From Paragordius varius (taxonomy: Eukaryota > Animalia > Nematomorpha), in assembly GCA_964247055.1 (NCBI GenBank), contig OZ176055.1, forward strand, positions 1,426,001-1,490,000: 64,000 bases of DNA, written 5' to 3'. The position numbers and the translations under genes are program-made. The notes beneath the pieces were generated by a model. The model was given only the letters and a program-made list of their open reading frames with translations. It did no database searches and was not told where the DNA came from. Each line of letters starts with the position of its first letter. Positions within the stretch are counted from its first letter, which is position 1. Below, piece by piece: positions 22,201-63,792 of the stretch.

Positions 22201-24452
22201 TTGCTAGAAAGTTATTAATTATTGCCAAATAGCATATGCAGAAATTGGTTAATAATAGTAAAACGTGAAAATAATAACTATAAGCCCCAATAATATTACC
22301 CTTTGTTATATACGCTATTTGGCAATAATTAATAACTTTCTAAAAATGTATACCTAGTCCTACTGTAAATCATTGTATGATATAATATTTTTCAATGTTC
22401 ATAGTATTCAATTCAAATTAATATCTATACCATATTAATAAAAACAATCATTTTTATAAAACGCCCTCCCTAAAACACCACATTCTAAAACAACATAAAA
22501 ACTTTATTATAAAACCCATACGATCCGTATTTCAACTACTCACTTGGTAGATATATTATCAGTTCCAGAAGAGATTACTGTGTTCATCAAATTATTAGCA
22601 TCTGTGATTATAGAACCACCTGTTGATTCAACAATAGCATCACCCTTTACGGAGGAGGAGCAACTGGTTGGAGAAGGGGAAGTTAAGATTGAACTACTGA
22701 TGTTGTGCAAATTGGTAGGCATGCCCTCTGTTTCAAAACTACAATTGAAAGTATCACCTTCAACAGTTACATTAACATTGCTCTCAGTGACCGTATGTAG
22801 CATGTTTGGGAAAAAGAGTTTTTTAAAATCCTCATTCCGAGTCTTATAGCTTGGGGCCAACATGTCCCAAAACGTTTTTTTATACTTGGTGGCGGTTCCA
22901 GTTGTTGTCCGATCACCTGTGCCCGCGGAAAATGACATTATACTGCTTTGATTATTGGTCATATTGGTGCTGCTACTGTTCATAGTTATAACTGTAGCTG
23001 TTACTGTACTGTTGATATTTAAGGTTGACATTGTCTTTGCCGCCATAGTAACGCAGTTTAATGATGCTGGGCTAAAACCGTCACCGGCTAACTCTATATT
23101 TGGTGCTGTTAAAATTTTCAATAAAATCCAATTAAAGATCTACATACAGTGGATTAATGAAAGAATATTTGTAGTAGAGAACATAATATTAGGAGTAAAA
23201 AATGAAAATTAGTGAAAATTAAAAGAAACAAAGGGCCATGGTGCACGAGTTAGCATTACCATGCCCATCCAATAATAATTATTTTTTACTATTTACCAAT
23301 GAAGGGAAAGAATATTACGTAGTTGTATGGTATGACATACTCAATAAATGCCCTTTCTTTCTTTTTTTTCTTTCACAAATGGTAAAAATAATTATGATTT
23401 GATGGGCATGGTAATGCTTACTCGTGCACCATGGCCCTTTGTTTCTTTTTTATTTTCACTAATATTCATTTCTTCACTCCTAATATTAATTTCTTTACTA
23501 CAAATCTTTTGGGTGGTAGTTATTTAAAAGCATAGACCCGGGTCTGATCGTTTATGAATAAGGCATATTCAATCAGGATCAAAATCAGTCAATTTATGCC
23601 AGAATGCAAATATATGTGTTTTAACTAAATAAAACAGATGTATATACTCATTCAAAATGCCATTTAAGGTTGATAACGATTAAGTTAAAAAAATTAAATA
23701 AATTTTCCCCATATAAAAATAAGGTATTATTCATTATATTATTGTGACTTAAAAATGTCAAAATGGTAAATGATAAATTACGGTCTTAAACGCACTCATA
23801 ACCTAATTCTAATTAGAAAACATGAATATATATACTCGTTATAGGGGCATTCGAAATATGATGTGCTTCCGATGTACCATGAGAAGCTATTTGATAAAAA
23901 AGTGTGTTTAATATTAAAATATTTAAATATAATCATAAAATTATGAGTAAGATTGTAAATATTACCTAACAAAGTTGATGGAATAGTAGCGAATTCAGGA
24001 ATGCTAGTAGATGCTTCAGACCCATGAAAAAATTGATGAGAGCTATCGACCGCAGTATATGTATTATGGAAAAGTATATGAGGAGAATTTAAATCTGAAT
24101 TTATGATAACAATATTATTTTGATCGGTTGATGATGATTTACTTTTGGGTCTTGGTGGTGCGATTGGACGCAGCGGTTGAACATTTAGTTTTGTTGTTGT
24201 ACATTGGTGTTCTTTATCGATATTGTTTTTTAGCGTTAACGAACAATTATGGTCTTTTTGAAGATCAGTTTCTGAATAAAATATATTTCTGGATTGCTTC
24301 TTAGCACAGTGGATACCACCTGGATCAGATTCAAAAGATACATTTGACAACCGACGTTCCTGTTCACCTAATCTAATATGAGCTCCATTAATTGAAGAGC
24401 TGTCTTCAAAAACATTTTCTAGGCTATTTATTAAATTCTCAACATCTGCCAT
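7044..24452 (-). CDS. GRAMD1: GRAMD1/Aster-like ER-PM sterol transfer protein (GRAM + VASt + TM), ~1260 aa, 19 exons
   Basis: Exons (minus): 24452-23966, 23105-22544, 21986-21830, 21050-20843, 20000-19923, 19522-19309, 19129-18802, 17235-17154, 15649-15461, 12549-12308, 11969-11902, 11356-11201, 10890-10820, 10573-10520, 10171-9901, 8919-8704, 8435-8286, 7786-7585, 7091-7044; phases consistent. Motifs: SYKTRNEDFKKLF, ERLIVDYSCALQKEILIQGRMYISQSYLCFYANIFRW, YGNELGLTSEDEDYV; VASt VECEVTNSGVPYSDAYYVICRYCI and IIEKNCQSGLQDYF; TM GAFTLKIFFFLIICCYILSL. The last exons are less certain. Confidence 0.9.
7131..7417. mobile_element. MITE family F (~290 bp, TACAGT...ACTGTA, Tc1/mariner-pogo type ends)
   Basis: TACAGTAAAAATTGAAATTATACGGACAAAA at left and its inverted complement at right. 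Lies in the last GRAMD1 intron, ~38 nt from the acceptor. Confidence 0.8.
12667..13003. mobile_element. MITE family A, copy 2
   Basis: TATACCATTTAC...AAATGGTATA ends, with about five 21-bp units on the left and about three inverted on the right. Confidence 0.85.
13208..13268. repeat. (TA)n microsatellite
   Basis: Long uninterrupted TA run. Other TA runs occur near 9565, 17270, 44740, 50740, 52206 and 61960. Confidence 0.95.
13700..14400 (+). mobile_element. Degenerate Penelope-like retroelement fragment (GIY-YIG endonuclease region)
   Basis: Peptide ...GC...SYIGQSNRNITLRFKE followed, after a frameshift, by HCVVNNHE...IDILAVE. This resembles the YIGQTxRxLxxRxxEH...H...H...IL.xE pattern. Contains stops and frameshifts; antisense within a GRAMD1 intron. 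Confidence 0.5.
14737..15317. mobile_element. MITE family B, copy 1 (~580 bp, 21-bp modular TIRs)
   Basis: TATACCATTTGCACTTCAAGAGTGTCC...GGACACTCTTGAAGTGCAAATGGTATA, with tandem GAACAGTTCAAGTTGGTCCTT units. Confidence 0.85.
19550..19720. repeat. Minisatellite with four TTAAGTCAAAGTAGAAT-like cores
   Basis: Core recurs near 19564, 19613, 19658 and 19707 (last one partial), next to a GRAMD1 acceptor at 19523. Confidence 0.7.
22178..22367. mobile_element. MITE family C, copy 1 (~190 bp, TACAGT...ACTGTA)
   Basis: Long inverted arms (AAAGTTATTAATTATTGCCAAATAGC / GCTATTTGGCAATAATTAATAACTTT). Homologous to 51227-51416 and 54898-55083. Confidence 0.85.
23161..23508. mobile_element. Foldback element, ~350 bp with ~150-bp arms
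   Basis: AAAGAAACAAAGGGCCATGGTGCACGAGTTAGCATTACCATGCCCATC is mirrored almost perfectly at about 23400-23448. Single copy in the window. Confidence 0.85.
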
Positions 24453-24580
24453 AGATGCGTGAAAGATACACCAGATTGAGTGAAATTAAAAAAATAGTGA
24501 AAATATCTTGTTAGAAATTTGATATATAAGATTCATTACTATATTCATTTTATCAACACTTTGATACAGCATTTTACTTC

Positions 24581-31026: not shown

Positions 31027-32733
31027 ATGAATTCTAAAAATCAAATATTTAACATTTCACTAATCGTAATACATTTTTATATTCTTCCTTCCATATTTGG
31101 AGAATCGTTGAAAAATAGCCAATTACAAACAAATCGTATAATTAAACTCCCCCCGTTTTTTGAAATTAATAAGGAATCATTTGATACAAATTCCTTTTCT
31201 CCCTGTATACCCAAAACTTATAAGTATGGGATAGTTTGTATTTGTAATAGTACATATTGTGATCACCTTGAACCATTGAATAATGCAGACTCCCCAAACC
31301 AGATAATTATTTATGAGTCAAACAAAGCCGGATTGCGATTTCATCAAACGTCCCAACAATTGAACAATTTACAAAAGGAAGCAAAAAGTGATTTTAATTC
31401 CGACCGAGATGCATACACCATAAAAATTGACCCAACTAAACAATATCAACGAATATTGGGTTTCGGCGGAGCGCTAACCGATGCGGCTGTTTTAAATTTT
31501 TATAACATGAGTCCAGGTACTCAAGAAAATCTTTTAGCCTCGTATTTTAAGTCATCCGGTCTGGGTTATAATATGATACGAGTTCCGATGGCAAGTTCCG
31601 ATTTTTCTGAACATAAATACACGTATGATGATGTGACAAACGATTACGACTTAACAAATTTTGCCCTTACGATTGAAGATGTGGATATGAAAATACCCTT
31701 CATAAAAAGGGCAAAAAGTATGGCCCCACACCCAATAAAACTTTTTACAGCACCGTGGAGTGGACCAGCATGGCTGAAAACAAGTAACTCAACAGTCGGA
31801 GGCAAGCTAAAGGGTGAACGAGAAATGAAAACGATGGCTATGTACGTAATCAAGTTTTTGGAATCCTACAAAAAAGTAGGGTTACATATGTGGGGCCTAT
31901 CACCTCAAAATGAACCCGTTGATGGATTGAATTCTCGTCATCCCTTTCAATCAACGCTATATGACACAAAAAACATGACAGATTACATGACAAACTATTT
32001 GTGTCCATTACTCAAAGAGTACAATTATCTGCCCAACAATCTCTCAGTTATGATTTTAGATGACAATATAGTTTATGCTAAAAAATGGGCCAATGACTTA
32101 TATACAAACATTAATGGTAGCACTGATTGCGTTTCAGGCATGGCTGTGCATTGGTACCTAAATAATTTTTGGAGTCAATCGGTATATGATGATATTCATA
32201 GCAAATGGCCTCAATATTACATTCTTAGCACTGAAGCATGTAGCGGGTTTCGTCCTTTTGAAAACGACGTCCGCTTAGGTATGTGGGAACGCGGAGAAGC
32301 CTATGCCAAAGATATCGCTAATAGTTTGATGCATTCAGTCTCGGGTTGGGTCGATTGGAATTTAGTGCTTAATCCACAGGGCGGGCCTAATTGGATCAGG
32401 AATTTCGTAGATAGTCCTATCATTTACAACGGGAGCGCGGATGAATTTTACAAGCAACCCATGTACTATGCCATGGGACATTTTTCAAAATTTATTTCGG
32501 ACAAAGCTATCCGCATAGATGTTGAAGTAGTTAAACCGCCTGATCAAGCCTCTGTTAAATGGTTTAATGTGGATCCTATCGTTACAGCAGTCGATAACAT
32601 AGATAATTATGTTGTAATATTTATTAATAAACAGTCGCAACAGATTAAAACTGTGATTCGATTAGACCAGCGAGAAATTAATTACACACTATCACCAAAA
32701 TCATTTGTTACAATGATCTGGCCAAAAACATAG
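31027..32733 (+). CDS. GBA1: Glucosylceramidase (glucocerebrosidase, GH30_1), single exon, 568 aa
   Basis: Signal peptide; animal-type PCIPK...IVCICNSTYCD motif; RVPMASSDFS; acid/base QNEP; nucleophile STEAC; WVDWNLVLNPQGGPNW; FYKQPMYYAMGHFSKF. Confidence 0.95.
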   Translation: MNSKNQIFNISLIVIHFYILPSIFGESLKNSQLQTNRIIKLPPFFEINKESFDTNSFSPCIPKTYKYGIVCICNSTYCDHLEPLNNADSPNQIIIYESNKAGLRFHQTSQQLNNLQKEAKSDFNSDRDAYTIKIDPTKQYQRILGFGGALTDAAVLNFYNMSPGTQENLLASYFKSSGLGYNMIRVPMASSDFSEHKYTYDDVTNDYDLTNFALTIEDVDMKIPFIKRAKSMAPHPIKLFTAPWSGPAWLKTSNSTVGGKLKGEREMKTMAMYVIKFLESYKKVGLHMWGLSPQNEPVDGLNSRHPFQSTLYDTKNMTDYMTNYLCPLLKEYNYLPNNLSVMILDDNIVYAKKWANDLYTNINGSTDCVSGMAVHWYLNNFWSQSVYDDIHSKWPQYYILSTEACSGFRPFENDVRLGMWERGEAYAKDIANSLMHSVSGWVDWNLVLNPQGGPNWIRNFVDSPIIYNGSADEFYKQPMYYAMGHFSKFISDKAIRIDVEVVKPPDQASVKWFNVDPIVTAVDNIDNYVVIFINKQSQQIKTVIRLDQREINYTLSPKSFVTMIWPKT

Positions 32734-33689: not shown

Positions 33690-34935
33690 TTAAGTATTTT
33701 TTAATGTAACACTCAGCGCAGTTTGTTTCAGTAATGAATGAGTTGTAACCTCTGATAGTGCCCGTGTTTTATAATTAAATATATGCTTAACATTTCGCAC
33801 ATTGTAATGGATGAAAAAGTATATGAAGGGGTTCAAAGCACTATTTATATATGATGTCCAGGTCACCAAAATAAATATCCATTCAGGGGCCCATTGAACA
33901 AAATCTGTATTATGAATCCAATCAATAGTTGATAACGTGAGAATTAAGCCAAAAAACGGAGCCCAACACACAATAAAAACTCCGACCAGCAATAAAATAA
34001 ATTTTATTGCCTTAGCATCTTGACATAAACGCATATGTTTGTAATCGCTTGGTAGGTTAGCCACATTAAAAAGTTCTTTTGTATGTTCATTCAGTGTACG
34101 TATCATTTTGCAACACAATCCACATATGATAAATATGGGAATGATGTATGAAAAAAAATGAGAATATAAGAGCTACCCCCAAATCAATTGTCATGTAACA
34201 TTTCTTATATTCCAATTGAATACGCCCCTTCCCTGGTTTAAGCTCCCAATATTTTACATTTTCATCTTTGGCTTTATTTTCAATGCTACTATTGATGAAT
34301 GCCAATAGGTTATTTTGGGTCTTAACAGTTTGGAAAAAACAATCGTTGGTAGTTAAACTAAATTTTTTTGTATGTGGTATTAGGTTAATACGTTGATTTA
34401 ATATTATCGAAGTCTGTTCTCGACTAATGCGAGAAGTGGTAAGGTTTAATCGATATATCGGGAAACATTTTGTGCACCCAAAATAGAAAGTTAACCCAAA
34501 CGCCGTGCATATGAGCCATAAAATCAAAATGCCCCGGTTATAATGACAAACGACTTTACGTTTTTGTAATCCATAACCAAATCCATTTCTCATCAGCAAG
34601 TATTGATCTACTGTTAGAAATACGACATGGAGCATACTAGCATTAGCTAAAATTATATCGAGGCATTTCCAAACCTTACAGGCCCGCATAGAAAAAACCC
34701 AAACACTCCAGGCATTATAAAAGACATCAAGTAATATTACTATAATGGCATAGAGGAGATCAGTGATGGCCAGTGAGAAGATTAAACGGAATCGTGGCAT
34801 ATTGCGGAATTTTTTGCAGCTCAAATAAACGATAATTAACCATGTATTAGCGATGACTATAATTAACCAAAGGATGAGCATGAGAGAAAATTTGGTGGCA
34901 AACATAGGTCCCTTCTCTATAATTTTGTAAACCAT
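33690..34935 (-). CDS. Divergent class A aminergic-type GPCR, single exon, one +1 frameshift in a T8 run (414 aa if corrected)
   Basis: TM2 SLAITDL; TM3 C..WKCLDIILANAS...DQY; TM6 FIVCWAPFF; TM7 WTSYINSALNPFIY. Removing one base from the run at 34151-34158 joins the two ORFs into TM5 FSFFSYIIPIFII. Confidence 0.85.
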
Positions 34936-38107: not shown

Positions 38108-40717
38108 ATGCGATTTACAGCGTTAGTTAGGTATGGAAAAATTATTTAATTTTTTAGTGGTGGTAAAGATAGTTGTTTTAACATTATCAAATGTCTTGAT
38201 CAGGGACATGAAATAGTATCATTATCCAATTTATATCCACCCGCTCAAGGTTTAAAATTAAATCATATTTTAGATGAAATCGATAGTTATATGTACCAAA
38301 GTATTGGCCATGAAGGTATTGAAATGATAGGTCATGCTACTAGATTACCACTTCATAGACAATGTATTACAGGCAAACCTTTAGAAACTACCCTGGATTA
38401 TCAACATAAATATATGGACGACGAAGTCGAAAATTTGTATACATTGCTAAAATCTGTAAAGGTAATTTTCTTTATAAATTATAAAGACAATACATATATA
38501 CAAATAATTTTATAAAAACAGCCATAATTATTTTTATTATACTTAAATAATTGAGTGAAATTTTCAGTTGAGTATGTTATATTTTTTTCTGCAGCCCTAA
38601 ATGATCAACTGTATTTATAAATTAATATGAGTTTATTGCTGTTATTTTAAAAATATGCCTTTCTTACATTTGATATATAAATGCAAATTCTTAGAGTCAA
38701 GAAATGATTGAGGGTGTGAGTTGTGGTGCCATTTGGTCAGAATATCAGAAAAACAGACTGGAACATGTATGTTTCTTACGCTTTATAAATTTAATTTTCA
38801 TAACTTAAAAAGAAATATTTTTTTTGGAAAACAATATATTTTTTAAAAGTGGATATTTTGAATATAACTCATCGTTTTGCGTTGCAAAATAAGATATAAT
38901 GAACTAAATAAGAATTTGTTTTTATTAATTAATGCATATCTACCAAAAGGCATCTTTTTACTTTTATCAGTCAATAATGCTCTTTGCTAAATGTGCTATC
39001 TAGAAATATTAATACAGCAATGTAAACTTACTTATATCGTATGTTTAAAATCCACTCAATTATATTTAAATAGTTTATGTAAGGAAATTAAGATATAAAA
39101 CATTATGTTATCTTTTTCAAATCAAATTTTTTGTCTTTTGGTTTTTACGTTTTTGTCTGTATAAATTCAAATTTATTATTTATAATCTCTCTTCATAGGT
39201 GTGTGAACGTTTAGACCTTGAACCACTATGCTATTTATGGCGTCGAGAACAATCTCAACTGTTGGCAGAAATGTTAGAGGCTAATCAATACAATTGTGCT
39301 ACAGGAACTGTACCATCCTTCCATGTCATAATTATAAAGGTGATTTGATTTTACAATTTATCTCGCAATCAATTTATCATTTTTTGATTTCAATGCCATA
39401 TGTTTTATATTAAAAGGTTTTATTTTGGTTTCATTATTTTCTAAACTTCTTGTTGGTATAATTGGTTAAATATACAGTATAAATAAGGCTCTAATTTAAT
39501 AGTCTATACAAAGTTACACACCTAAATATTATAAAACTGGCCTAAAAAATAAGGTTACACATTTTTTAAAAGATTTTTGAATAATAACAATAGTTATATG
39601 CCATTAAAATAAAATTTAATTTAGATTTTAAAGATAATATTTTTTAAAAAAAGGATCAAGGTGCGGATAATGACCCATATATTTTCCAAGGTGCATATCA
39701 GGGTTTATTTTTTTTATTATGCAAACAAATGGATCAATTGCATTATTTTGCAGATTAATGTTTTAATTCTGTTACTTTATTTTATAATTATTAATTGCTT
39801 CTTAAAAGCGGTGCCTAATGTTACTTATTAATTGTCGTAATTTAACATATTTTTCCTATTTACAGATTATTTGCTTTTGTAGGTTAAAATTGGAAAAAGT
39901 TATAATTCCAATTATTTGAATGAAACCGGTCTAAAAGCTTTTTTCAAAATAACTTTGAAATCAAGACCATTTTGTGCTCTTTTTTTCAATGATTAAAAAA
40001 AATTTACATTTAAAATTAAAATATATATGGATAAAACGTAAAAATTAAAAGCAAATATTTTTTTGAAACAATCATACTTTTTTAAACTTTAATTTTTTTC
40101 TACACCAATTATATAATCACAAGACTGAATCAAAATGTTGTACTAACAATTTAAAATCTTTTACCTCTCAAAATAATAACATAGTTGGAAAAAAAAATGG
40201 ATTAAAAAAATATGGTTATCTTTTTAAAATATTTGTCTTTTGGTTTTTTACTTTTCTATGTATAGTTTACTGGTCAGACCCAACTTTATGTTAAAAAATC
40301 TTACTGTAATTTTATATGCCTTAAATAAAGGTAGCCTGTCTCGGTTTAAATCCTTACACAGATCTTGGCCTTACGCTCGATCAATTACAACCAAAATTAA
40401 TGGATTGCCTAACAAAGTATGGAATAAATGTTTGCGGGGAGGGTGGGGAATATGAAACATTTGTACTGAATTGTTCACTTCATAACCTGTATAAAAGACC
40501 ACTAAAGGTTTCACATGCAAAAACATTCTTGATTCAAGACCATGACAATAAGCCTGTACAAATTTGTGCAAATTTAACAAATGTCGGCCAAAATTTTACC
40601 AATAGCAGTAATAATTGTGTTATAAACAACAATAATGGTAATAATATCAATAATAGGGCAATCACCTTATTAGCTCCGGTAGGTTACCTTAAAATGGATC
40701 ACATAGAAATGGGATAA
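38108..40717 (+). CDS. DPH6: Diphthine--ammonia ligase (diphthamide synthetase), ~300 aa, 6 exons
   Basis: Exons 38108-38130, 38158-38249, 38274-38461, 38695-38766, 39199-39339, 40331-40717. Motifs ALVSGGKDSC, DEIDSYMYQSIGH, DEVENLY, GAIWSEYQ, GINVCGEGGEYETFVL, APVGYL. Confidence 0.95.
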
Positions 40718-41394
40718 ATGTTTATTGAATAATACTTTACATTTTTTTGACACCATACAATGAAAAACTCATGTATCTGGAAATACTGCTCACTTAATAA
40801 ATAGTATTCTTACTTAGATTTCCTTTTTAAAATTAAGTTATCATAGTTTTGAGATTTATTTTGATATAAAGTCAAGTTGTGTAAAATTTTGATTTGTAGC
40901 ATGGTGGTATTAAATGATATCTTAAACCTGTAATCAAAAATTTGATGAATATGAACTGTGGGCGTTTACAATTTGATTTTCCCAGGTTTTGGTAATTGAT
41001 ACGTTCTTCAGAATAAAATTAATATGTTTTGAGATATGTTTTAAAAAATATTTAGAATTAAATTATATGGATCATGGAATTTATTTCATTCATTTTAAAT
41101 TTATCCATATATCTAAGCGCTAATATTCATGTAATTGACAAATGACTATGGGTAAAAATATCACATAAAATAGAAAATGACTTTTAATTTTGAGCGAGTG
41201 TTTTTAAAAATGTATTATTATAAAAATAAATTTTCGGTGTGACTTAAATTTGAAATTGGCTAAAACGTATCATATATTAATTACCTTATTAAATTTTATG
41301 AGAAAAAAAGGCTTTTTAATACAAATTCAGCCTTTATAATATGGTTTTTTGATAGTTTTGTGATGGTAAATAAGCATGGCATAAATAGGCACAA

Positions 41395-44300
41395 CTAACA
41401 TTCCTTATTCCAATCAATTAATCCGTTCAAGGTTTCACCCTTTTCATACTTTTCGAGGTTCGCTCCAAAAACTTTATTAACCTAAAAAGAGATAAGTTTG
41501 TTATAATTTCACAAAAATTCTAAATATAAGCTGATATATTATTATAAATAAGGTCTTGGTTACGTAGAAAAAATTTAATTTTTATAACTTTTATATTTGA
41601 TGTATGTAAAATAATAAATATTAATATTTTTATGGGAAAAAAGGAATAAAATGCAAAAATATATATACTAAATGTGGCATTGTGGTACCAGAAACATGGG
41701 GTGTGATCACAACCTAAGATATATTAAAAAAACTTAATATCTGCATTTTTATTGAATGGATTTTTTCAATAACCAAAAAAATATTGCAAGATAAAACATT
41801 ATTAAACATCTAACCTGTATCAAAAAAGATACCTACCATATATTTTTTTTAACTTTGATTATAAAAATACCGTATGATTTTAGGATGCAAAATAATTTTT
41901 ATGCAACTAACTATATATTAAAAAATTATTCAAGGTAGCTCAGAACATAAATTTAAACCTTTTCCACTTATATATAAAATAAAATATACCTGAGGCATGG
42001 TCCATATCTTACTCGTCTCTGGTAAGGGTTCAGTTTCAAAAACATCTAAAATTGCGGCAGAAATCCATTTTTCTCTATAAATAAATGGCAACATAGGCTT
42101 TGAAAAGAGTTAAAATTATTATGAAAAGTAAGATAAAAAAATTTCAATTTCATCGTTTTTTGTTTGAATGTTGATTTTACATGGATAATAATCGCAACAA
42201 AATTAAAAGATAACATTTTAAAGCATGATCTTTTTCCATAAGAAAATAAAAGTAAAGAAAAAATGTAAAAATTAAGAGAATTTTTTTTAAAAATTAGCAT
42301 ATTTGAATTCTTACAAAAACGATCGTTTTGCCTTACAAAAGAAAGAATTAATATGTAATTTAATAACAGTTTCAATTGTTACATTGCACTGTTGTTTTTT
42401 TCATTTGGATGTATATTTAAAAATAACAACGTTTAAAAAAATATATCTATGTTTGAAAATAATATTTTTCTTCGACTTTATATATTTTTTTGCTTATTTT
42501 ATTTTTTTATTCTAATATTTTAAAATACTTTATACTTTATATTGTAATGAATAAAAATAGTAAAAAAAAATGATTAAAATATTGAAAAATATTTTTTTAA
42601 ACGGTTTAAAAACCGCGTTTCGGTTCCATATCGGATTTTAATCCATCCTTAATAAAAAAAAGTCTACATAAAATCTTATTAAATTAACCATATATATTAC
42701 CAAACTCATATTATATAACCTATTTGTAAAAAAAATAATTTAATTAACTTTTAAGCTCTTTGCTTAAATATTATCAGGTTTCGTGTTTTACGGCCTTAAT
42801 TTTTATATAATTTCATAATATATCAAAATATTTTATAATATTGATTATAGCAAAAGGAACATCTAAATAATAAATATATACAGTAAAAATTGAAATGATA
42901 CGAACACAAAACTAAAAAGGTTTGAAGAAAAATATTTGCTAAAAAAACTGCATACTTTATATATGTCTTGATTTTTAATATATAAATGATTGTTTTGAAT
43001 TGAAAGCTATAAACTAGATATGTAATTTGGTTACACAATCAATTATTTATTATATGATTGCAATTAATTGATTTCTAAAGGATAAATAAAGGTTTAAAAA
43101 GTATGGTTGTCGTTTAAAAAAATAATTGTTGTTTTTATATTTTTGCGTTTTGTCCGTATAATTTCAATTTTTACTGTATATTTGCGTAATTTACAATTTA
43201 ATTTGCTCATTTGAAATTAAAAATTAAATCCGTATCATTTTAAAAAATTAAGGTAGGAAATTACTCTAAAGCCTTGACCAGCTGATCTTCCGCTATTAAA
43301 TCTCCCCGGCCAATATTGATAAAAACGGGTTTCTATTCTCACAAATGATAAATATAATTTAAATATAGGTTTAAGATTAACACTTTAATATTCCATGATT
43401 TTTTTCGGTTTTATTAAACTTTTTAGGTTAAGCAACAATTATCATATAAAACAATTGTGAACGTAAAAAAAGAAAGATAAACCAAATCGCAAAATCAAAA
43501 ATGGTTTCAAAAAAATTGTTTTAAAATAAAAATCCACGTCCTTAAATTAAAATTGATAATTTACATAAAAATATATTAATTCGAAAAAATCGTGTATATA
43601 TTTAAAAAACTGTTATTTTCAAGATTAAAATAAGCCAATTTAATTATCTCCTTTAGTAGTGATATTAATAGATATACTTAAACTATTTCATATACATATA
43701 AAAATTTCAAATTTTATTTGATATATATATATATAATATTTAAATTAAATTTAAAAAAAATTATGTAAAATATGGAAATATAAACACCCGTTTTTCCGCA
43801 CACTTCAAAAGATCATTGTTCAATAAACCGCGCGTTGATGGAATGCTCGGTAATATGCTCACCAAATAATCACAAGATGCTAAAAAAGTTGTAAGTTCTG
43901 ACCCTATACTAAAAAAATATTTTACAAAAATGATTTTATAAGAACTCACCAAAATTATTTATAAGGAAAATGTATGTAAATATAAATTTGATAAATGCCA
44001 CTATTTATTTTAAACTTAAAAACTGTATTTTTAACTTAAAAGCGTATGTTTAATAGCGTAAGATGACAAATGATGTGCAAAAAAATATTCATAAATATGA
44101 CCTATATTATACGGAGGACAAAAGAATATTTTTAAATTCAAATCTCATAAAGTAGTTTAAGTAAAAAACTATCTAAAACAACTAGAATGTGGAATTTTTT
44201 TGTCATATCTATCTAAACATCTACAGATGTGAAAAAAAATTAAAAAAATCTTATCCTCAATATAAAATTTGACATAGAAAATTCAAATTCACTCTCGAAC

Positions 44301-44734
44301 AATTCAAATTCATCCTCAAATAAATTATAGTGTTTTTAATATAAAAAACCTATATTTTTATAAAATAAAATTTTGTTATATAATACTGAAAAAATAATAA
44401 ACTATGCCATAAAGATATATTTTATATTAAATGATGAGTTATATTAGTTCGAAAACACATAATTTATTTTTAGGGTGAATTTGAATTGTTCTAGAGTGAA
44501 TTTGAATTCTAAATAATATACAATGATTTATCAATCAGGGTTGGTTCCGATTTTCGCGTTGTGCTATAAGTGAATACAGTACATCCGAAAGATTTCAAAA
44601 GTCTTGCAACTAAAAATGAAAAAAAATAATTAAATAATCACTACGGACAAAAATTTAAATTATAGGGACAAAACGTAAAAATACAAATACATGCAATATT
44701 TTTTTCTAAAATATATCACCATACTTTTTAATTA

Positions 44735-44773
<39 letters not shown>

Positions 44774-47059
44774 CTTGTTTAAAATTAGAAAGTATGAAAC
44801 AGAGATAAATATATATATATATATATTTAATATATATATGTAATATTTTGTAACATATTCAATTATATATTTTACGATGGTAATTAAATAATTTATACAT
44901 GGGAAAAATTAAGGTTTAAAAAAGTATATTTGCCTTTTAATATTCTTACCTGTTCGCATGATTACATATTTTACTGTAAAAAAACCAAATTATATTTAAC
45001 AATTTAATTTTTTTGTATACAGCTTCCTTTAAAAACCCATGCAAAATTAAATATATATTGACATGTTATAAACAGCACATTATTTTATAAGCTTTGTTTT
45101 CCAAATAACGGACTTTTTTTTCACACACAAAAATAAAATCAATTAGTTTGCTAAATAACCTTTAATAAATGTCACCCAAGATAATTTTTTTATAATTATA
45201 TTCAATATAAAACAAATAAAATTAACTAAACCTCCTTAGTTCTTCCCATAAAAATGGTAGTTAATCCCTCTTTTTTAAAAATATTGAAAAATTGAGATTA
45301 ATTCAAAATAAAGGTTTATATATTTTATAAAAAATGTAAAAACACAAGAGCACTGTGATTAAGTATTAATTTTTACTGTATCATTTATTTTTAATAAAAA
45401 TATAACTACAAAATATTTAGTGTTTGAGAATTAAATAAACATTTAGGCTAATAATCATTAACAATATATATATAAAAGTGCATGAGTAGGCTAATTGCAA
45501 GCGCTGTTAAATACAAAAAAAATAATTTTATGGGTGTATTACAGTATGCATTGTTTATGGTTGCTTATTTCACACTATAGTAGGGAGCAATATACATCAC
45601 AGTAGTGTATGGAAAAAAGAAATGAAAAATAGTCTTTATTCTAAGATAGATGTTTTTTCCATACACAACTGTGTTGTAAATTGCCCCCTCTATAGTGTGA
45701 AATAAGCAAGCACATTAAAATGCATACTCTATATCCTAAAATATTTTGAATAGCAAACATTCAACATTTAACAGCTTTAAAGAAATAAACTTAAATATAC
45801 CTTCTTTTCCAATATCGCCAAAACCCATGATGCCAACGGTCAGTTGGTATAAGAGACGGTAACCCCATCGCAAATAATCCCTATATAATTAATAAAGTTA
45901 TGAAAGTTTACAGTACAAAATTAAATGTATGCATAAATAATTTTGTAAATAAAATCATATTGTTAGATTTTATTTTTTTTCTTTACAAACTATATGATTA
46001 AATTGTTTATGTTACCAATTTACATTTCTATTTCATATTTTGGAGACCAAAACGCAAGAATATTTAGCCTAATTTATGTTTTTATTCATAATTTATTGCT
46101 CTATGAAAAACTACGTAAAAAATTGAAAATATACGGACAAAACGTGAAAATACAAAGACAATTTTTCCAACAGACAATCATACTTTTGATTAATTAATGT
46201 TTAACTCATTGTTTTATATTTCCAAGGTATAAAATAGAGATGTATATTGGTAACATAATCTATTCTATATTTTAGATTTGTTATTCACTATTTTACTATG
46301 ATTTATTTAGTTTTGAAAAAATATCGTTGTCTTTTAGAAAAATATATTTGTCTTTATATTTTTACGTTTTGTCCGTATAATCTCAATTTTCACTGTATGT
46401 TAAAATAAAAATAAAAGTTTGGTAATAAGTTAAATTGTTTAAATATCGATAATTTGAAATAATATTGATTAAACCTATGGCTCAAATATCAATATACAGT
46501 TTCGATAGTTTAATTTACATATTTAAATTAACTTAAAAATAAAATTAAAATGTACCATTTTTTAAGTTTTTGGTTATCGTGCATATGATAAAATAACCGT
46601 TCATGTGCAACTATTTGTGATATGACATATTCACCCATAACAGGACCAAACACCCCAGTCATACGTGTAAATTTTATCTGTTTTGGAATCTTTAAATTCT
46701 ATGTAAATTCAAAAAAACTTGATATTTTGTTTCATGGATTTGGGAAAAAAATTTATCTACACCTAAATATTTATTTTATATGTAAAGCAAACCTGCTGAA
46801 GTAGCTTGCATCCATTTAAGTTTTGGCATATGTGATAAAAGATTTGGTATAACTGCGGCATCGGCTACTAAAACTTCTTTATCCTTTATTTCATGTTTAA
46901 GGTCATCAGTCAGCATTGGACATCCCCCTTAATACAATATAGACGTTAATCAAAACTTTTTGCGGGTACTACACAAAATTTTAGGTTGGGAAAGGCTTGA
47001 ATTATACTTTCAGCAAAACCGGGGAAAGCCGACGCAAAGACAACATTTTTAACCTGCAT
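41395..47059 (-). CDS. D-isomer-specific 2-hydroxyacid dehydrogenase (glyoxylate/hydroxypyruvate reductase A-like), paralog 2, 329 aa
   Basis: Exons 47059-46957, 46927-46793, 46762-46719, 46689-46556, 45880-45801, 44609-44522, 43908-43788, 43332-43265, 42074-41990, 41713-41669, 41481-41395 (990 nt). Motifs LKWMQATSAGVD, GFGDIG, INIGRGD, LDVFETEPLP, ITPHVSG. Confidence 0.93.
42879..43178. mobile_element. MITE family F copy
   Basis: TACAGTAAAAATTGAAATGATAC...TTTTGTCCGTATAATTTCAATTTTTACTGTA, in intron 8 of paralog 2. Confidence 0.85.
44277..44510. mobile_element. MITE family A, copy 3
   Basis: ATTCAAATTCACTCTCGAACAATTCAAATTC...GAATTTGAATTGTTCTAGAGTGAATTTGAATT, ending ~11 nt from a splice donor. 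Confidence 0.8.
45539..45733. mobile_element. TACAGT-ended foldback MITE (~195 bp)
   Basis: TACAGTATGCATT..GCTTATTTCACACTATAG mirrored by CTATAGTGTGAAATAAGC..AATGCATACTCTA. Confidence 0.75.
46112..46397. mobile_element. MITE family F copy
   Basis: AAATTGAAAATATACGGACAAAACG...CGTTTTGTCCGTATAATCTCAATTTTCACTGTA. Confidence 0.8.
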
Positions 47060-47744
47060 TTAAAAATTTAAAAACATTTGGCACAGTGAATGTTTTTATT
47101 TTCAAATGCAAGGTTTAAAATATCCTGGGTAATCGAAATTTATTATACAAATTTATTATATACATGGATGTAAATACTAAATATATTCGATATAAATTAA
47201 GATTATCTATAATTAATATAAAAATTACCGTACCAATAGAAATATAGACAGTTCCCGTCCCCCACGATGACCTCGATTGTAAAAAAAACATGGTTATTTA
47301 TCGCATTCTGACCGTTTTTACAAATATAAATAAATATTGGATAATTATCATCTATATTTATTTAATTGTAAAAAATACTTAAATATTCTCTATAAGAAGG
47401 TTATAAAATACCCATTAATTACCGAGTATATGGGAATAGTTAACCACTGCATTTTAAATACAGGGACTCTCTATGTATACCGGACAATGTTTTAAAAAAA
47501 TGTAAGATCATTAAATGCGCCAGCATCTTGATAACTCTACACAACATATAGAAGCAAGTTTCGTTGTAAACGCAAAAAGGCAAAGAATGCACGATATTTT
47601 TATGGATTAAATCAAATGATCTTGGGCGTTTATTAACATTTATTAAAAAATGTGAGGTAACGCAAACTGAAAGGCTAACACATGCATTTCATCATATGAT
47701 TTTAATTTAAAATTTTAAATCAGTTTTTATTTTCAAGTTTGAAA
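47060..47744. promoter_or_regulatory. Probable bidirectional promoter/5'UTR region between divergent dehydrogenase paralogs
   Basis: Only 685 nt separate the two ATGs on opposite strands. No specific motif was identified. Confidence 0.6.
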
Positions 47745-50733
47745 ATGTCCAAAATTAAAGCTGTTTTTTGCTCAATTTTGCCAGGATTGACGGAAAATAT
47801 TAAAAAATTATCAGATGTAAGATTTTATATCGTCCCTGCCAGTATATTTTAATAATGTTTAGATAATGGCAGCTTAATATTAGATCCGAATTTGAAAGCT
47901 ATGATAAGGGATAAAGAGATTTTAGTTGCAGATCCAAGTCTGATGCCAATTTTTTTGGATACTATGCCAAAACTTAAATGGATGCAGTCTACGTTGGCGG
48001 GTCAAAATTTTATTTAATGATTTAGGTGTGGATAAATTTTTTAAACAAGTCACTGATACATGCAAAGTTAAATTTCATTAATATTGTTTTAGATTCCTGA
48101 GCATGTAAAATTTACCCGGATGACTGGAATATATGGACCTGTTATGGGGGAATACGTAATTTCCCAGATAATTTCCAACGAGAGATATTTTTATCAAATG
48201 CATGAAAATCAAAAAGACAAAAAATGGTTTAGTCTTCAAATAAAAAATATATTCTATGTGTATTGATAGGGATCACATCCAATGTAATTATCGCCTAATT
48301 TCCGATTTAACAGTCGGACTTATGGGTTTCGGCGATATAGGCAGCGAAAGTAATGATTTATAAGCCATTCAAATTTTTCTTTTATTAATTGAATATTTGA
48401 GTAATATTTATGTGATGCCGTTTAGTTGCAAGATTACTTAAGGCCCTTGGATGCAAGGTGCACACCCTCACCTCAAATCGTAAATTGGATCCAAAACGTA
48501 TTGATAAATCTTTGTAATATTTAATTAATGACCTTATATAATATTTTTTTGAATATATTATTATGGCCATAAGAAGATTTCGCAAACTACGATGGAAATT
48601 TTTAAGAAATTAATTATGCGTTTTATTTTTATCAAATATTCAATTTGATTTGATCCAAACCCGACTAATATTTTTTTTGACCCGATGATATTTATAATTC
48701 AGTAGATTTCTCCGACAAAATATTATGATTTCGTTTTCTAGGAGTTTAACCGATGTTTATCGTTTATAGTATCAGTACAGAATTATCGCAATTTTTGATT
48801 TCTTGCGATTACATAGTTTCAATATTACCCAGTATCCCTTCAACCCGTGGTTTATTAAATGGTGGTAAATTAGAAGGTGCCAAATTAAAAGTTAGTTTTA
48901 TCCGTTGTTATATACGGCTAAAATTAAACAATTATAAACTAAATTTTATAATTTTCTTTTTATGATAGAAACCAGTACTTATTAACATTGGCCGTGGTGA
49001 TTTAATTGACGAGGCTGAGATTTTGAAAGCACTTAAGTAATAATTGGTTTAATATTGATAATTATAAATTAATTAACCTTTCATCTAAAAATTATATATT
49101 AACCGCTGTTAGTATTAAAACGGTGTTTGAGTAGTGACGTTTTTGATAGCTCTTTTAGTTCAAACATTATTATAATAAAAATTTTATTTGTTTTTTTTGT
49201 CAAATAAATTGAATGATTTACAACCTTTATATAATTGATATCTAGTCAAGGTGATTGAGGTTTATAAATGTTAAAATAATTACATTTTATACTTTAATTT
49301 TAAAAGGTAGGATATAAAAAGTTTTATTAACTAATTACGATCTGATACTTTTGTATATAATAGAGAAAAATGGATATCTGGAGCCATATTAGACGTATTT
49401 AGTCAAGAGCCCTTACCCTCTACAAGCATGCTTTGGAATCATCCACAGGTTTACAAATAATTTTAAAGCTCAAAATTAGTAAAAAAACTTAATGTTCTGC
49501 GGAATACAGGACAGCACCGAAAAATTTCATGAATAAGCCATATTGCCAACTATTAGAAACCTGCAAAAACCATTTTTGTGGGTAGGGAAAAAAAGTTTGC
49601 TAAAAAAATTTTCCATTTTATAACAGCAGTAGAGGCGTAGCTAAGGGGTAGGGGCAAGGGGGGCTTGATGCACTTGGCGCCATAGTTGAAAGGGTGCCCG
49701 AATTTTAAAAGTTGTAATGTTATTTCAAAAAAATAGGCATCTTCTATAATACATAAAAGAATTACCCATCAATGAGTACAGTTCGGGATTATTTATTTTT
49801 TACAATGCAAGGAGTTGTATGGTAGGGGTGGGGCATAATCACGGATTCATGCACCGGGCGCCAGAAAGCAAGTTATGTTTTTGAACAGCAGGCAAAACTT
49901 AGCGAAAATTAATTATATCAATGTTTTTGAGGGATATAACGCACTTTCTTAAATTAAATTTCGAATGTTGTTAATCTTACAAAAGAATTTCACCAATGAT
50001 TTTCATAAAAAGTTATTTATGTGTATGAAAAATTTGGGTACTAAATGGTACTATACAAAAATGTCACAATGGTTTATTTTGCACTAAAAGGGGCATAAAA
50101 CCAGTCGTTGCAAAAAGGGTTTGATTGTATTTTTCTTGATTTTTTTAAAAAAAATAGTTGCCATACGTGGCGCGTTTTGCCTCATAATCCACCTTTCCCA
50201 AAAAACTTATGTTTTAAGATATACTTGCTAAGAAATATGTTAAGAAGTTATTTGATTTAGTTAAAAACATTTTTTGAAAACATATTTCCGTTTCCAAAAA
50301 AGCCATTATATTAAATTAAGAACGCTGCTCATATATATCATTTACAATTCACATTCACCCTTAAACAATTCAAATTCACCCTCAAAAAATCCGAACTTGC
50401 CCTCCAATTCAAATCTAAAAATAAATTATGGGCTAATATAACTCATCATTAATATAAAATATATTTTTACGACTATTTTATTTTGAACAGAATTTCATAT
50501 TTTAAAAATATTAAACAATAAAGGTAATTTTTAATCGTAGAAATGCACATAATTTTTAAGGTTAATTTGAATTGTTCAAGGGCGAATTTGAATTGTTTAA
50601 AGGTGTTGAACTGAAATGCTATATATAAATGTATGGGGATAGACTATTAATACTTGACAAGCGAAAAGCACACCATTATTTAAGAGGTTTTGACAATTTA
50701 CCTGTAATAATCCGTTAAAACTAAAACAATTCG

Positions 50734-50771
<38 letters not shown>

Positions 50772-51106
50772 ATTTCATAATTTTATTTTATTTATATTAA
50801 GGTCAAAATTACTCCTCATGTTTCTGGGTTTACAATGGCCAAATTGGTATTTTCTATTTCATTTTTGTTGTTTGGACATTTAAAATTAATTATATTTATG
50901 TTTTTTTGTGTTTGTATTAATTTTTTTTCATTGAATTTCAATTTAAACTAATTCTTATTGAAATGCTTCAATCGTTTTATTTAATCTTATTGATATGCTG
51001 TATATTTTTAAACATATAGGTTAATAAAGTGTTTTTAGCCAATCTTGAAAAGTTTGAAAAGGGTAAACCCTTAAACGGACTCATAGACTGGAAAAAAGGA
51101 TATTAA
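47745..51106 (+). CDS. D-isomer-specific 2-hydroxyacid dehydrogenase (glyoxylate/hydroxypyruvate reductase A-like), paralog 1, 327 aa
   Basis: Exons 47745-47841, 47863-48000, 48026-48066, 48093-48226, 48270-48349, 48426-48513, 48770-48890, 48969-49036, 49364-49448, 50802-50846, 51020-51106 (984 nt). Motifs LKWMQSTLAGVD, GFGDIG, INIGRGD, LDVFSQEPLP, ITPHVSG, C-terminal IDWKKGY. Confidence 0.93.
49628..49885. mobile_element. GC-rich-ended short interspersed element (AGAGGCGTAGCTAAGGGG... terminus)
   Basis: The terminus is the reverse complement of CCCCCTTAGCTACGCCTCTG at about 13318-13337. The right end is degenerate (GCACCGGGCGCCAGAA). Confidence 0.55.
50335..50622. mobile_element. MITE family A, copy 4
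   Basis: TATCATTTACAATTCACATTCACCCTTAAACAATTCAAATTCACCC... with inverted units and a TGCTATATA end; in intron 9 of paralog 1. Confidence 0.8.
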
Positions 51107-61980: not shown

Positions 61981-63792
61981 TTAATATTTATACTTGCTTG
62001 TTTTGGCGTTTGTGTCCTGATTATCGATTTGGTTTGTATTATTTTCCAATGTATCCAACATGGTTTTAAGCCTTTTTTTGTTGGGTTGTATTATTTCACC
62101 TTTAGTGTTTGAGATACGGTGTTTAGAATTTCGATATTTAACATCTGTTTCCTTCCTATGATTACTACATTGTTGATCGTCATCTTGATATGCGTACTTT
62201 CCAGAGTCAAAATTATTCGTATTGGAAGTTGAAAGGAGGTTTTTGTGTGAATTTGGGTCTGAATTGTTCGTTGCAGAAGGGGATAATATTGAATTATTCC
62301 GGCATTTTACACTTTCAATATTATTATTGTTGCTGATATAAGGAACGTTTCCATAACGTTGAAGGGAAGAGATAACATCATAATCGTAAAGAAATGCCGC
62401 GGGCGAGGTATGATTTCCAATGTTGGGATGAGGGGCAGTATGATGGCCTGCATGATAAAACCCCAACATTGGATGGTAATATGGTGTTGCTGGATTAAAT
62501 GCATGTGAATTGAAATCAAACGGGGCCGGAGTTTGTACTTCATTATGGCTTTTATCATAAATGTTTTCGTTATTTGTGATATTTTTCCCGTTTCCGTAAT
62601 ATTTTGCACCATCATTTTTATTATGGTCAACTGGTAGTACGTTTGATTGTTGGGTATCATCTGTAGAGGTCATTGTGGGAACTCCTAAAGCTGATGAGTG
62701 TAAATGATGTGCCATATATGGTGGAAAATCATAGTAATACATATTTGAAGGGAGTTTTCCTCCCTTAAATGATTGTTGATTTTGTCCACTCGTTGAATGT
62801 AAGGTAGATTGTGGTACTAGCGTATTGCTGCCTAGTTCTTTTTTGCTTTGTTGGTAGGGCTCTGCGGCTAATTGACTTTGGGTATATTGGTGGTCTTTTC
62901 CTGTACCCATAAACATATTGTAAGGACTGAAAGCGGCATAATGTATGTTATTCAGCAACATTGAATGCGGATGGGGATATGAGGTATATTGATGATTCAT
63001 ATAAGAAAGTGGGTTGGGCATTTCAGAATTAGCTGTATGCTCTTTATTCTCATATCCTAATGAGGTTTGGGTGTTTTCCCTATAAAATTATAAAAAACTG
63101 TATCTTGGTTCCATTATGTATGATCAATTATATCTAATTGTATAAAACTTCCTAACTTTGGTTTAATTTATTAAAAATATAGCTATAAAAGTTATAATGA
63201 AATATTTATTAAACCTGTCACCCTTGTAATATTTATGAGGTGTGGTATTTGGATTTTCATCATTATAATTTGTATTGTGTGTGTTATTGTGCCCATTGTT
63301 TTTTGGTAGCTTAAGTTGGTTATCGGAAGAAACGCTAAAATCTATCAAAGGAATGGGGGAAACCTTTAGGCATTCGTTATTATTCAGCGGTATATCCTCT
63401 GTAGAAAAGGGTTCATTCTGAGTTCTTAGTTTATCTTCCCGACGCCATTTCGCCCTTCTGTTGGAAAACCAAACCTGTATCAATGTGTCATGCAATTATT
63501 TTTATATTATATTAATAAAACCCCATAAATTTATGGAGCATATAGGGAAAAATGCAAAAAATAGGACTTTTTAAAATTTATAAAATAACTAAAAGTAACA
63601 ATGATTAATTTTCCTAAAAATGTGGTTATGTAGTATCAATGAAGCTTATGATATATAGCTTTTTATAGCTTAAGCTATAGTTAGATAAAACTTATATTGG
63701 TAAACTAACCTGGATTCTTGCTTCGGGTAGATCGATTAATCCTGAAAGTTTCTCGCGAGCAAACACATCCGGATAATGTGTGCGCTCAAATT
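61981..63792 (-). CDS. PAX6: Pax6-like paired-class homeobox gene, 3' exons only (5' part lies beyond the window)
   Basis: Exons 63792-63710 (83 nt, [28 protein letters not shown]), 63474-63215 ([19 protein letters not shown]..., Ser50) and 63079-61981. The intron between ARIQ and VWF is typical of Pax6. Confidence 0.85.

What the first reader, a model, noticed from the sequence alone, without database searches (positions are those of the whole stretch)
38131..48269. Ultra-short spliceosomal introns (21-30 nt) in a metazoan genome that also has kb-scale introns
Seen: DPH6 introns of 27 nt (38131-38157) and 24 nt (38250-38273); dehydrogenase paralog 1 introns of 21 (47842-47862), 25 (48001-48025), 26 (48067-48092) and 43 nt; paralog 2 introns of 29, 30 and 29 nt at the same positions and phases. 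Most are required to keep conserved motifs in frame, and the paralogs cross-validate them. Three of the four 3n-length ones carry in-frame stops. They are little more than GT + A/T-rich + TTAG. Established: typical animal minimal introns are about 45-70 nt, and introns of about 20-30 nt are known mainly from ciliates, nucleomorphs and dicyemids. Inference: the spliceosome here handles both extremely short and long introns, implying altered U1/U2/U2AF geometry or lost factors. This is the strongest candidate for novel biology in the window.
Basis: partly seen in the sequence, partly recalled or inferred. Interest (0 to 1): 0.8.

Follow-up and report, generated by a model that had tools for sequence, protein, structure and literature searches.

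The report
Tiny 21-30-base introns, hairworm genes
Three ordinary genes of what is most likely a horsehair worm start with genuine-looking introns only 21-30 bases long, two of them exactly where a fish, a sea hare and a crab have introns of 187-2,747 bases; no RNA was available to show the cutting.

Summary
DPH6 carries introns of 27 and 24 nt. Dehydrogenase paralog 1 carries 21, 25, 26 and 43 nt. Head-to-head paralog 2 carries 29, 30 and 29 nt in the same phases. All are GT..AG and 8-25% GC, against 37% in exons.

They look like real U2-type introns:
- Retaining any of them except DPH6 intron 2 gives a premature stop.
- Reading through DPH6 intron 2 adds exactly 8 residues that five homologs lack.
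- Both DPH6 micro-introns sit at the position and phase of 187-2,747-nt introns in a pipefish, Aplysia and a crab.
- The paralogs keep 67% identical exons, with synonymous sites saturated, while the intron interiors are unrelated.

Elsewhere in the genome RPL3 has eight introns, all 24-29 nt. Five of six chaperonin (CCT) genes start with 23-28-nt introns followed by long ones.

The genome is most likely a nematomorph.

The U1, U2 and U6 recognition sequences are canonical, and SF1 and SF3B1 are present.

No RNA evidence could be obtained. Introns under 30 nt are published for dicyemids and myxobolid myxozoans, and a 5'-biased short mode of about 32 nt for parasitic flatworms. This is therefore a new lineage of a known kind. 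Earlier agents of this scan reported the same class on other DNA of this genome.

The parts
38108..38130 (+). DPH6 exon 1 (ATG, 7 codons plus 2 nt of the Ser codon of the SGGKDS motif)
   Evidence: The translation MRFTALV matches the N-termini MRVVALI and MRVAALI of DPH6 homologs printed.
38131..38157 (+). DPH6 micro-intron 1: 27 nt, phase 2, GT..AG, in-frame stop if retained
   Evidence: It has the same position and phase (xx|T GGx GGx AAA GAx) as a 187-nt intron in pipefish and a 2,747-nt intron in Aplysia.
38158..38249 (+). DPH6 exon 2 (GGKDS...PPAQ)
   Evidence: TIGR03679 Dph6_archaeal profile positions 6-32, E 5e-4. tblastn to named DPH6 proteins.
38250..38273 (+). DPH6 micro-intron 2: 24 nt, phase 1, GT..AG, no in-frame stop
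   Evidence: Read-through gives exactly 8 extra residues against gaps in 5 of 9 homologs. The same position and phase (G|AT) holds introns of 503 nt in pipefish, 402 nt in Aplysia and 439 nt in a crab.
38274..38461 (+). DPH6 exon 3
   Evidence: The 62-aa query finds DPH6 proteins at their residues about 40-100. Three of these hits (P0291, P0296, P0266) were confirmed as PF01902.
38462..38694 (+). DPH6 intron 3: 233 nt, phase 0. It is followed by introns of 432 nt (38767-39198) and about 0.99 kb (39340 to about 40330).
   Evidence: The position after '..VK' is shared with crab, Aplysia and pipefish.
47745..50846 (+). D-2-hydroxyacid dehydrogenase paralog 1, at least 10 exons; introns of 21, 25, 26, 43, 76, 256, 78, 327 and 1353 nt
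   Evidence: Exons hit PF02826 and NF041369.
47842..47862 (+). Paralog 1 micro-intron 1: 21 nt, the shortest seen; phase 1; in-frame TAA if retained
   Evidence: My own reading of the sequence found that the other GT/AG choices I tried run into stops. The flanking VPA motif is shared with paralog 2.
48001..48025 (+). Paralog 1 micro-intron 2: 25 nt, phase 1; splits the conserved AG|VD motif
48067..48092 (+). Paralog 1 micro-intron 3: 26 nt, phase 0
48227..48269 (+). Paralog 1 intron 4: 43 nt, phase 2. The homologous intron in paralog 2 is 675 nt.
   Evidence: Exon 4 matches NF041369 positions 78-117 and exon 5 matches PF02826 positions 30-50.
41663..47059 (-). D-2-hydroxyacid dehydrogenase paralog 2, head to head with paralog 1; introns of 29, 30, 29 and 675 nt, then roughly 1.2, 0.6, 0.45, 1.2 and 0.27 kb
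46928..46956 (-). Paralog 2 micro-intron 1: 29 nt, phase 1
46763..46792 (-). Paralog 2 micro-intron 2: 30 nt, phase 1, in-frame stop if retained
46690..46718 (-). Paralog 2 micro-intron 3: 29 nt, phase 0
47060..47744 (.). 685-nt spacer between the two divergent start codons; a likely shared promoter region (inference)

Best explanation
These are genuine U2-type GT-AG spliceosomal introns that have shrunk to 21-30 nt (median 25) in a nematomorph (horsehair worm) genome. They are old introns at conserved positions, not new insertions.

They form a discrete size class. It fills the first one to three intron positions of ordinary genes and all or most intron positions in the three ribosomal-protein genes examined. 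Later introns of the same ordinary genes are 76 nt to several kb.

I infer that they are removed by the ordinary major spliceosome through intron definition. The signals would be a minimal 5' site GT[A/T], a T-rich 3' end (T at -5 in 28 of 30) before AG, and a probable branch adenosine about 8-9 nt upstream of the AG, often inside a yUnAy or TTAAT-like word.

Shown: sequence anatomy, reading-frame necessity, colinearity with homologs, position and phase conservation, paralog conservation, and canonical snRNAs. Inferred: actual removal from RNA, the branch site, and the recognition mode.
For: - Anatomy and frames. All 30 micro-introns collected are GT..AG. The 23 measured are 8-25% GC, against 37% for exons. 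Of the 21 micro-introns of 30 nt or less tested for retention, all but DPH6 intron 2 give a premature stop, as does the 43-nt paralog 1 intron 4.
- Homolog colinearity. DPH6 exon 3 aligns from residue about 40 of full-length DPH6 proteins, which fits 8+30+1 residues upstream only if both micro-introns are removed. Intron 2 read-through equals an 8-residue insertion.
- Position and phase conservation. Intron 1 corresponds to pipefish 187 nt and Aplysia 2,747 nt. Intron 2 corresponds to pipefish 503, Aplysia 402 and the crab Petrolisthes 439 nt.
- Paralogs. Over 173 codons they are 67% identical, with pN 0.21 and pS 0.77. The intron interiors are no more alike than shuffles, yet both copies keep 21-30 nt.
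- Genome-wide pattern. RPL3 has 8 introns of 24-29 nt; four of them (introns 4, 5, 6 and 8) are directly shown colinear with fly and beetle RPL3 fragments. RPS6 has 23, 25, 27 and 23 nt. CCT genes begin with 23-28-nt introns followed by introns of 71 nt to 3.3 kb.
- Spliceosome. U1, U2 and U6 are canonical. SF1 and SF3B1 are present.
- Branch-like signal. A occurs at -8 in 18 of 30 (p 0.003). yUnAy lies 6-13 nt from the 3' end in 22 of 30, against 15.3 in shuffles (28 of 3000 shuffles reach it).
- The introns are present in DNA contigs of run X1, which may be the same sample the assembly was made from, so they are not assembly artefacts.
Against: - There is no RNA evidence. The three runs guessed to be RNA hold nothing of RPL3 or of this stretch. 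No same-species protein was found in the word database.
- DPH6 intron 2 is 3n and stop-free, and vertebrate homologs are 4 residues longer there, so retention cannot be fully excluded for that one.
- The branch-site signal is weak in so AT-rich a sequence.
- U2AF and RBM17 were not examined.
- The sample of 30 introns comes from conserved housekeeping genes and was curated by hand.
Confidence: 0.85

Rival explanations
1. A specialised or depleted spliceosome (altered U1/U2/U2AF geometry, lost factors, or a dedicated factor such as SPF45/RBM17 for the micro class) handles these introns.
For: - The 5' site is degenerate: +3 is A in 15 and T in 14 of 30.
- U2 carries one extra A next to its branch-site reader.
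- U12 snRNA was not found.
- The class is sharply bounded at 21-30 nt and polar toward gene 5' ends, which could reflect a separate recognition mode.
Against: - The U1 5' end, the U2 GUAGUA and the U6 ACAGAGA/AGC are canonical.
- SF1 and SF3B1 are present.
- GTT donors also occur at several long introns.
- Myxozoans with 22-27-nt introns keep a canonical U2 and U2AF (PMC13644364).
- The U12 negative is weak: only 42 of about 10,000 candidates were scored.
Confidence: 0.1
2. Some 3n-length, stop-free segments, chiefly DPH6 intron 2, are not introns but short lineage-specific coding insertions.
For: - The 24 nt are in frame without a stop.
- The region between 'LxP' and 'DELDSYMYQ' varies in length among homologs; vertebrate-type proteins have 4 more residues there.
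Against: - The segment is GT..TTTTAG with 12% GC.
- The 8-residue insert is absent from five homologs.
- It sits exactly at a phase-1 intron position shared by pipefish, Aplysia and crab.
Confidence: 0.04
3. The segments are removed at the DNA level (ciliate-like internal eliminated sequences), or they are assembly or pseudogene artefacts.
For: Programmed DNA elimination exists in some nematodes (general knowledge). A one-base frame break at a T8 run in the neighbouring GPCR shows that the assembly, or that gene, is not flawless.
Against: - All 30 begin with GT and end with AG, not TA..TA.
- They are present without gaps in DNA contigs of run X1, though that run may be the sample the assembly was made from.
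- Exons are under purifying selection.
- Lengths of 21-30 nt at conserved intron positions are not what sequencing errors produce.
Confidence: 0.01

Closest known systems
Ultra-short introns of myxobolid myxozoans (Henneguya, Thelohanellus, Myxobolus) and of Dicyema japonicum (PMC13644364; Lu et al. 2019, PMC6736024, listed but not read)
   Same: GT-AG introns of about 20-30 nt at conserved ancestral positions. The 5' signal is reduced to GT plus one weak base. A residues are weakly conserved a fixed distance upstream of the AG. U2 is canonical. The host is a parasite with an AT-rich genome.
   Different: In those animals the whole intron complement is short, with a median of 22-27 nt, in compact genomes. 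Here the micro-introns are one discrete class beside introns of hundreds to thousands of bases in a 110.6-Mb genome. By a one-gene tree the lineage is Nematomorpha (Ecdysozoa), neither Cnidaria nor Dicyemida.
Bimodal intron lengths of neodermatan flatworms (Gyrodactylus salaris short mode about 32 nt; tapeworms; PMC4040987)
   Same: A sharp short mode dominates intron positions 1 and 2 of a gene, and long introns dominate later positions. Both classes coexist in the same genes of a parasite.
   Different: The mode here is about 25 nt (range 21-30), shorter than the flatworm mode. The phylum is different, so the origin is probably independent. In the three ribosomal-protein genes examined, all or some introns at every position are micro.
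Ciliate and nucleomorph tiny introns (Paramecium about 25 nt, Stentor 15-16 nt; PMC5014332, and as cited in PMC13644364)
   Same: Same size range, GT..AG ends, AT-rich interior, spliced by a canonical spliceosome.
   Different: Those are unicellular lineages in which all introns are tiny. No depletion of 3n lengths is seen here (11 of 30 are 3n), unlike what is reported for Paramecium (my own recollection, not checked here).

Membership tests
U2-type GT-AG spliceosomal intron | GT at the 5' end and AG at the 3' end | tested here: met
   30 of 30 micro-introns, including all 9 of the finding.
U2-type GT-AG spliceosomal intron | Removal restores the reading frame and colinearity with homologous proteins | tested here: met
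U2-type GT-AG spliceosomal intron | Same position and phase as introns of orthologous genes in other animals | tested here: met
   Both DPH6 introns match pipefish and Aplysia; intron 2 also matches a crab. Not tested for the dehydrogenase.
U2-type GT-AG spliceosomal intron | Absent from mature mRNA; lariat formed at a branch adenosine | not testable with these tools
   No RNA run of this organism was served. The three 'RNA?' runs laid nothing. The branch-like signal is only statistical.
U2-type GT-AG spliceosomal intron | The genome encodes the major-spliceosome snRNAs with intact recognition sequences | tested here: met
   U1, U2 and U6. U4 and U5 were not searched.
Animal genomes with a median intron under 30 nt (myxobolid or dicyemid type) | Most introns of the genome are under 30 nt | tested here: not met
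   Most introns of the CCT genes, DPH6 and both paralogs are 76 nt to 3.3 kb.
Animal genomes with a median intron under 30 nt (myxobolid or dicyemid type) | Reduced splice-site motifs (5' 'GTa', little beyond AG at 3') | tested here: inconclusive
   The 5' site is reduced to GT[A/T]. The 3' side keeps a clear T run at -7 to -3.
Flatworm-type bimodal intron architecture | The short mode is concentrated at ordinal intron positions 1-2, with long introns later | tested here: met
   DPH6: 27, 24, then 233 and more. Paralogs: 21-30 three times, then longer. Five of six CCT genes start with 23-28 nt, and none of the later CCT introns measured (roughly 30) is micro.
Flatworm-type bimodal intron architecture | The host is a neodermatan flatworm | tested here: not met
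   The GBA tree joins the window to Gordionus (100/99) and then to Nematoda. The mitochondrial DNA has long zero-spacer palindromes, as described for Nematomorpha (PMC6649704).
U12-type (minor) intron | Long conserved 5' site and TCCTTAAC branch box; U12 snRNA present | tested here: not met
   No such motifs in the 30 introns. U12 was not detected (a weak negative).
Ciliate-like internal eliminated sequence | TA-bounded and excised from somatic DNA | tested here: not met
   The boundaries are GT..AG. The segments are present in DNA contigs of run X1. Germline versus soma could not be separated.

The most novel reading that the evidence does not exclude
Nematomorpha evolved, independently of dicyemids, myxozoans and flatworms, a discrete and long-maintained class of 21-30-nt introns tied to the 5' end of genes and to ribosomal-protein genes. 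The sharp size window and the 5' polarity would reflect a distinct promoter- or cap-proximal recognition mode of the ordinary spliceosome. It would be the first such case in Ecdysozoa, in a large-bodied animal that also splices kilobase introns.
Probability: 0.35. Interest if true: 0.7.

Novelty: new member of a known kind. Interest (0 to 1): 0.55.

Why it matters
A 2026 survey of 51 animal genomes found introns under 30 nt only in myxobolid myxozoans and Dicyema (PMC13644364). A nematomorph would add a third or fourth independent lineage and the first in Ecdysozoa.

Unlike those two groups, this genome keeps the tiny and the kilobase class side by side in single genes. One cell's spliceosome must therefore handle both. 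That makes it a natural system for asking what sets the lower size limit of an intron, and why the short class sits at gene 5' ends.

There is also a practical point. Gene predictors with a minimum intron length of 30-40 nt will break or truncate many gene models in such genomes. That could inflate reported gene 'loss' in hairworms; this last point is an inference that I did not test.

Tried and rejected
- **RNA evidence.** The look-up of sequencing runs listed no confirmed RNA holder. I spent the single read-laying run on RPL3, which has eight micro-introns and should be highly expressed, with three 'RNA?' runs plus a DNA run. The RNA-guess runs laid nothing. The tool's filter against conserved, human-like contigs may have removed RPL3 transcripts, so this is no evidence either way.
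- **Exon-by-exon PDB searches** were uninformative, as were most Pfam scans of single exons. The exons are too short.
- **Species identification** from a cox1 piece and a search for same-species RPL3 fragments that might span a splice junction found nothing above 79% and 85% identity.
- **The look-up of encoding contigs** had no record for the Gordionus GBA protein, so no second nematomorph gene structure could be compared. It also had none for four of the DPH6 homologs.
- **Micro-specific 5' site.** I considered this and dropped it, because GTT donors also occur at long introns.
- **RPS3A last intron** (44 nt?) and a possible terminal 25-nt intron of RPS6 were left out as unresolved.
- **Joined exons.** Exons were searched by reference and frames were carried arithmetically.


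Full report
**Observation.** The window is very AT-rich: 21-34% GC in 2-kb bins. I carried reading frames arithmetically from the start codons.

- DPH6 (+) has exons 38108-38130, 38158-38249 and 38274-38461, separated by 27 and 24 nt.
- Dehydrogenase paralog 1 (+, ATG at 47745) has introns of 21, 25, 26 and 43 nt.
- Paralog 2 (-, ATG at 47059) has introns of 29, 30, 29 and 675 nt.
- Both paralogs have phases 1, 1, 0, 2. Intron 1 is displaced by one codon in the paralog alignment; the others are at identical sites.
- All of these are GT..AG with 8-25% GC, against 37% for the exons.

**Are they needed?**

- If retained, every one except DPH6 intron 2 puts a stop codon in the intron or a few codons later.
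- DPH6 exon 2 matches the archaeal Dph6 profile from position 6. The five missing positions correspond to exon 1.
- The family scans left exon 3 open, so I used the large representative search on it. It found 520 proteins. In the full-length ones the match starts at about residue 40. That is where exon 3 falls only if both micro-introns are removed (8 + 30 + 1 residues upstream).
- Three of the hits were confirmed as DPH6 by PF01902, and six were named by their sources: pipefish, Aplysia, Mya, Phallusia, the crab Petrolisthes, and one unnamed.
- tblastn of nine hits against the window shows that reading through intron 2 adds exactly eight residues opposite a gap in five of them. Reading upstream through intron 1 hits a stop and loses the match, while exon 1 (MRFTALV) resembles the homologs' MRVVALI.

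**Conserved intron positions.** I fetched three DPH6 genes of other animals and mapped their own proteins on them.

- Micro-intron 1 has phase 2, inside the Ser codon before GGKDS. The same site and phase holds a 187-nt intron in the pipefish and a 2,747-nt intron in Aplysia.
- Micro-intron 2 has phase 1, in the Asp codon before ELDSYMYQ. The same site holds introns of 503, 402 and 439 nt in pipefish, Aplysia and crab.
- The 233-nt intron 3 is shared too.

So the micro-introns are old introns that shrank, not insertions or artefacts.

**Paralogs.**

- tblastx between the two head-to-head genes finds ten shared exons.
- Over 173 codons they are 67% identical, with pN 0.21 and pS 0.77, which is saturated. 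This is an old duplication with both copies under purifying selection.
- The interiors of the three homologous micro-intron pairs align no better than shuffles. Yet both copies have stayed within 21-30 nt.
- The fourth homologous intron is 43 nt in one copy and 675 nt in the other, so introns can leave the class.
- Later introns of paralog 1 are 76, 256, 78, 327 and 1,353 nt. Those of paralog 2 are roughly 0.27-1.2 kb.
- DPH6 continues with 233, 432 and about 990 nt.

**Rest of the genome.** G000 has 110.6 Mb in 44 contigs.

- RPL3 has eight introns, all 24-29 nt. tblastn with RPL3 fragments of a fly, a beetle and others gives contiguous query coordinates across introns 4, 5, 6 and 8.
- RPS6 has 23, 25, 27 and 23 nt.
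- RPS3A has 23, 128, 24, 126 and 67 nt.
- Six chaperonin (CCT) genes were read at their 5' ends. They run:
  - 25, 26, then 607 and more;
  - 23, 23, then long;
  - 28, about 84, about 57, then about 1,190;
  - 24, 71, 73, then long;
  - 27, 28, 36, then 461 and more;
  - about 61, then 589 and more.
- None of the later CCT introns measured (roughly 30) is micro.

Altogether I collected 30 micro-introns of 21-30 nt, with a median of 25.

- Eleven have 3n lengths, so there is no depletion of 3n.
- Position +3 is A in 15 and T in 14.
- T occurs at -5 in 28 of 30.
- A occurs at -8 in 18 of 30 (p 0.003) and at -9 in 16 of 30.
- A yUnAy word lies 6-13 nt from the 3' end in 22 of 30, against 15.3 in shuffles (28 of 3000 shuffles reach the observed value).

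This is a weak but consistent branch-site signal.

**Spliceosome.**

- U1 has 17 matches, U2 has 46 and U6 has 2.
- The best copies carry canonical ACUUACCUG, GUAGUA (with one extra A upstream) and ACAGAGA/AGC.
- SF1 and SF3B1 are present.
- U12 was not found. This is a weak negative.
- GTT donors occur at several long introns too.

Nothing here points to lost factors or altered snRNA recognition.

**Organism.**

- An intronless glucosylceramidase ORF (31027-32733) has Gordionus (Nematomorpha) as its best normal-length relative.
- In a 29-taxon tree it joins Gordionus with 100/99 support, and the pair sits next to Nematoda.
- A mitochondrial contig exists. It carries zero-spacer palindromes with arms of 131 and 97 nt, a known hallmark of nematomorph mtDNA (PMC6649704, PMC10380579).
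- The GC content matches the 26.9% reported for Gordionus.
- The genome is therefore not a myxozoan, dicyemid or flatworm.
- The genome sizes published for the nematomorphs studied so far are 200-300 Mb, while this assembly is 110.6 Mb. The species remains unidentified.

**RNA.** No RNA evidence could be obtained. DNA contigs of run X1 contain the RPL3 introns without gaps. X1 may be the same sample the assembly was made from.

**Literature.**

- Introns under 30 nt in animals are published for Dicyema and myxobolid myxozoans (PMC13644364).
- Parasitic flatworms have a short mode of about 32 nt concentrated at intron positions 1-2 (PMC4040987).
- The two nematomorph genome preprints held in the library do not contain the word 'intron'.
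- No listed paper combined nematomorph terms with the short-intron terms, and one search turned up no nematomorph genome paper that discusses introns.

**Verdict.** The best reading is ordinary U2-type splicing of extremely shrunken, 5'-polar introns in a nematomorph. This is a new lineage of a known phenomenon, and it still lacks RNA proof. Earlier agents of this scan reported the same class on other DNA of this genome.

Noticed in passing
window 33690-34935 (-), break near 34140-34160: A rhodopsin-type GPCR (PF00001 in two overlapping ORFs) changes frame by one base at a run of eight T inside transmembrane helix 5. No GT..AG is there. It is either a homopolymer error of the assembly or a recently broken gene.
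   Followed up: partly
window 31027-32733 (+): An intronless 568-aa glucosylceramidase (GH30) gene. Its nearest named relative is Gordionus at 44-45% identity.
   Followed up: yes
L040 (G000:C44) 53-314, 770-1472 and 4064-4257: The mitochondrial contig holds zero-spacer palindromes with arms of 131 and 97 nt. Upstream of cox1 there is also an array of about ten copies of a hairpin unit of about 72 nt.
   Followed up: partly
G000:C2:9807614-9809654 and G000:C6:5283631-5285832: Two CCT genes show open frames of 590 and 757 codons that run through what should be introns. This is very unusual at 25% GC. It may relate to the exon-edge repeat arrays that earlier readers noted in SPT16.
   Followed up: no
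G000 whole genome: U12 snRNA was not detected with Rfam RF00007. The minor spliceosome may be absent, as in nematodes, but only 42 of about 10,000 candidates were scored.
   Followed up: partly
L004 1501-1695: The best U2 snRNA copy has one extra A between stem I and the GUAGUA branch-site reader. There are at least 46 U2 matches, many clustered on contig C3.
   Followed up: partly
window 44730-44798 and 50728-50779: Long introns of both dehydrogenase paralogs contain similar TA-rich microsatellites (translated as IYIYIY) and short shared repeats.
   Followed up: no
window 12000-24500 (-): ORFs that by eye resemble GRAM and VASt domains, which would suggest a GRAMD1/Aster-like gene spread over about 12 kb with long introns. 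No family scan matched them.
   Followed up: no
window 63163-63495 (-): An exon encoding the end of a homeodomain (PF00046, E 3.5e-05), followed downstream by a 346-aa low-complexity ORF (61981-63021).
   Followed up: no
run X3 (organism B): A run labelled as another organism holds 35% of the sampled words of 44000-49900. This suggests a close relative, or a mixed or mislabelled sample.
   Followed up: no
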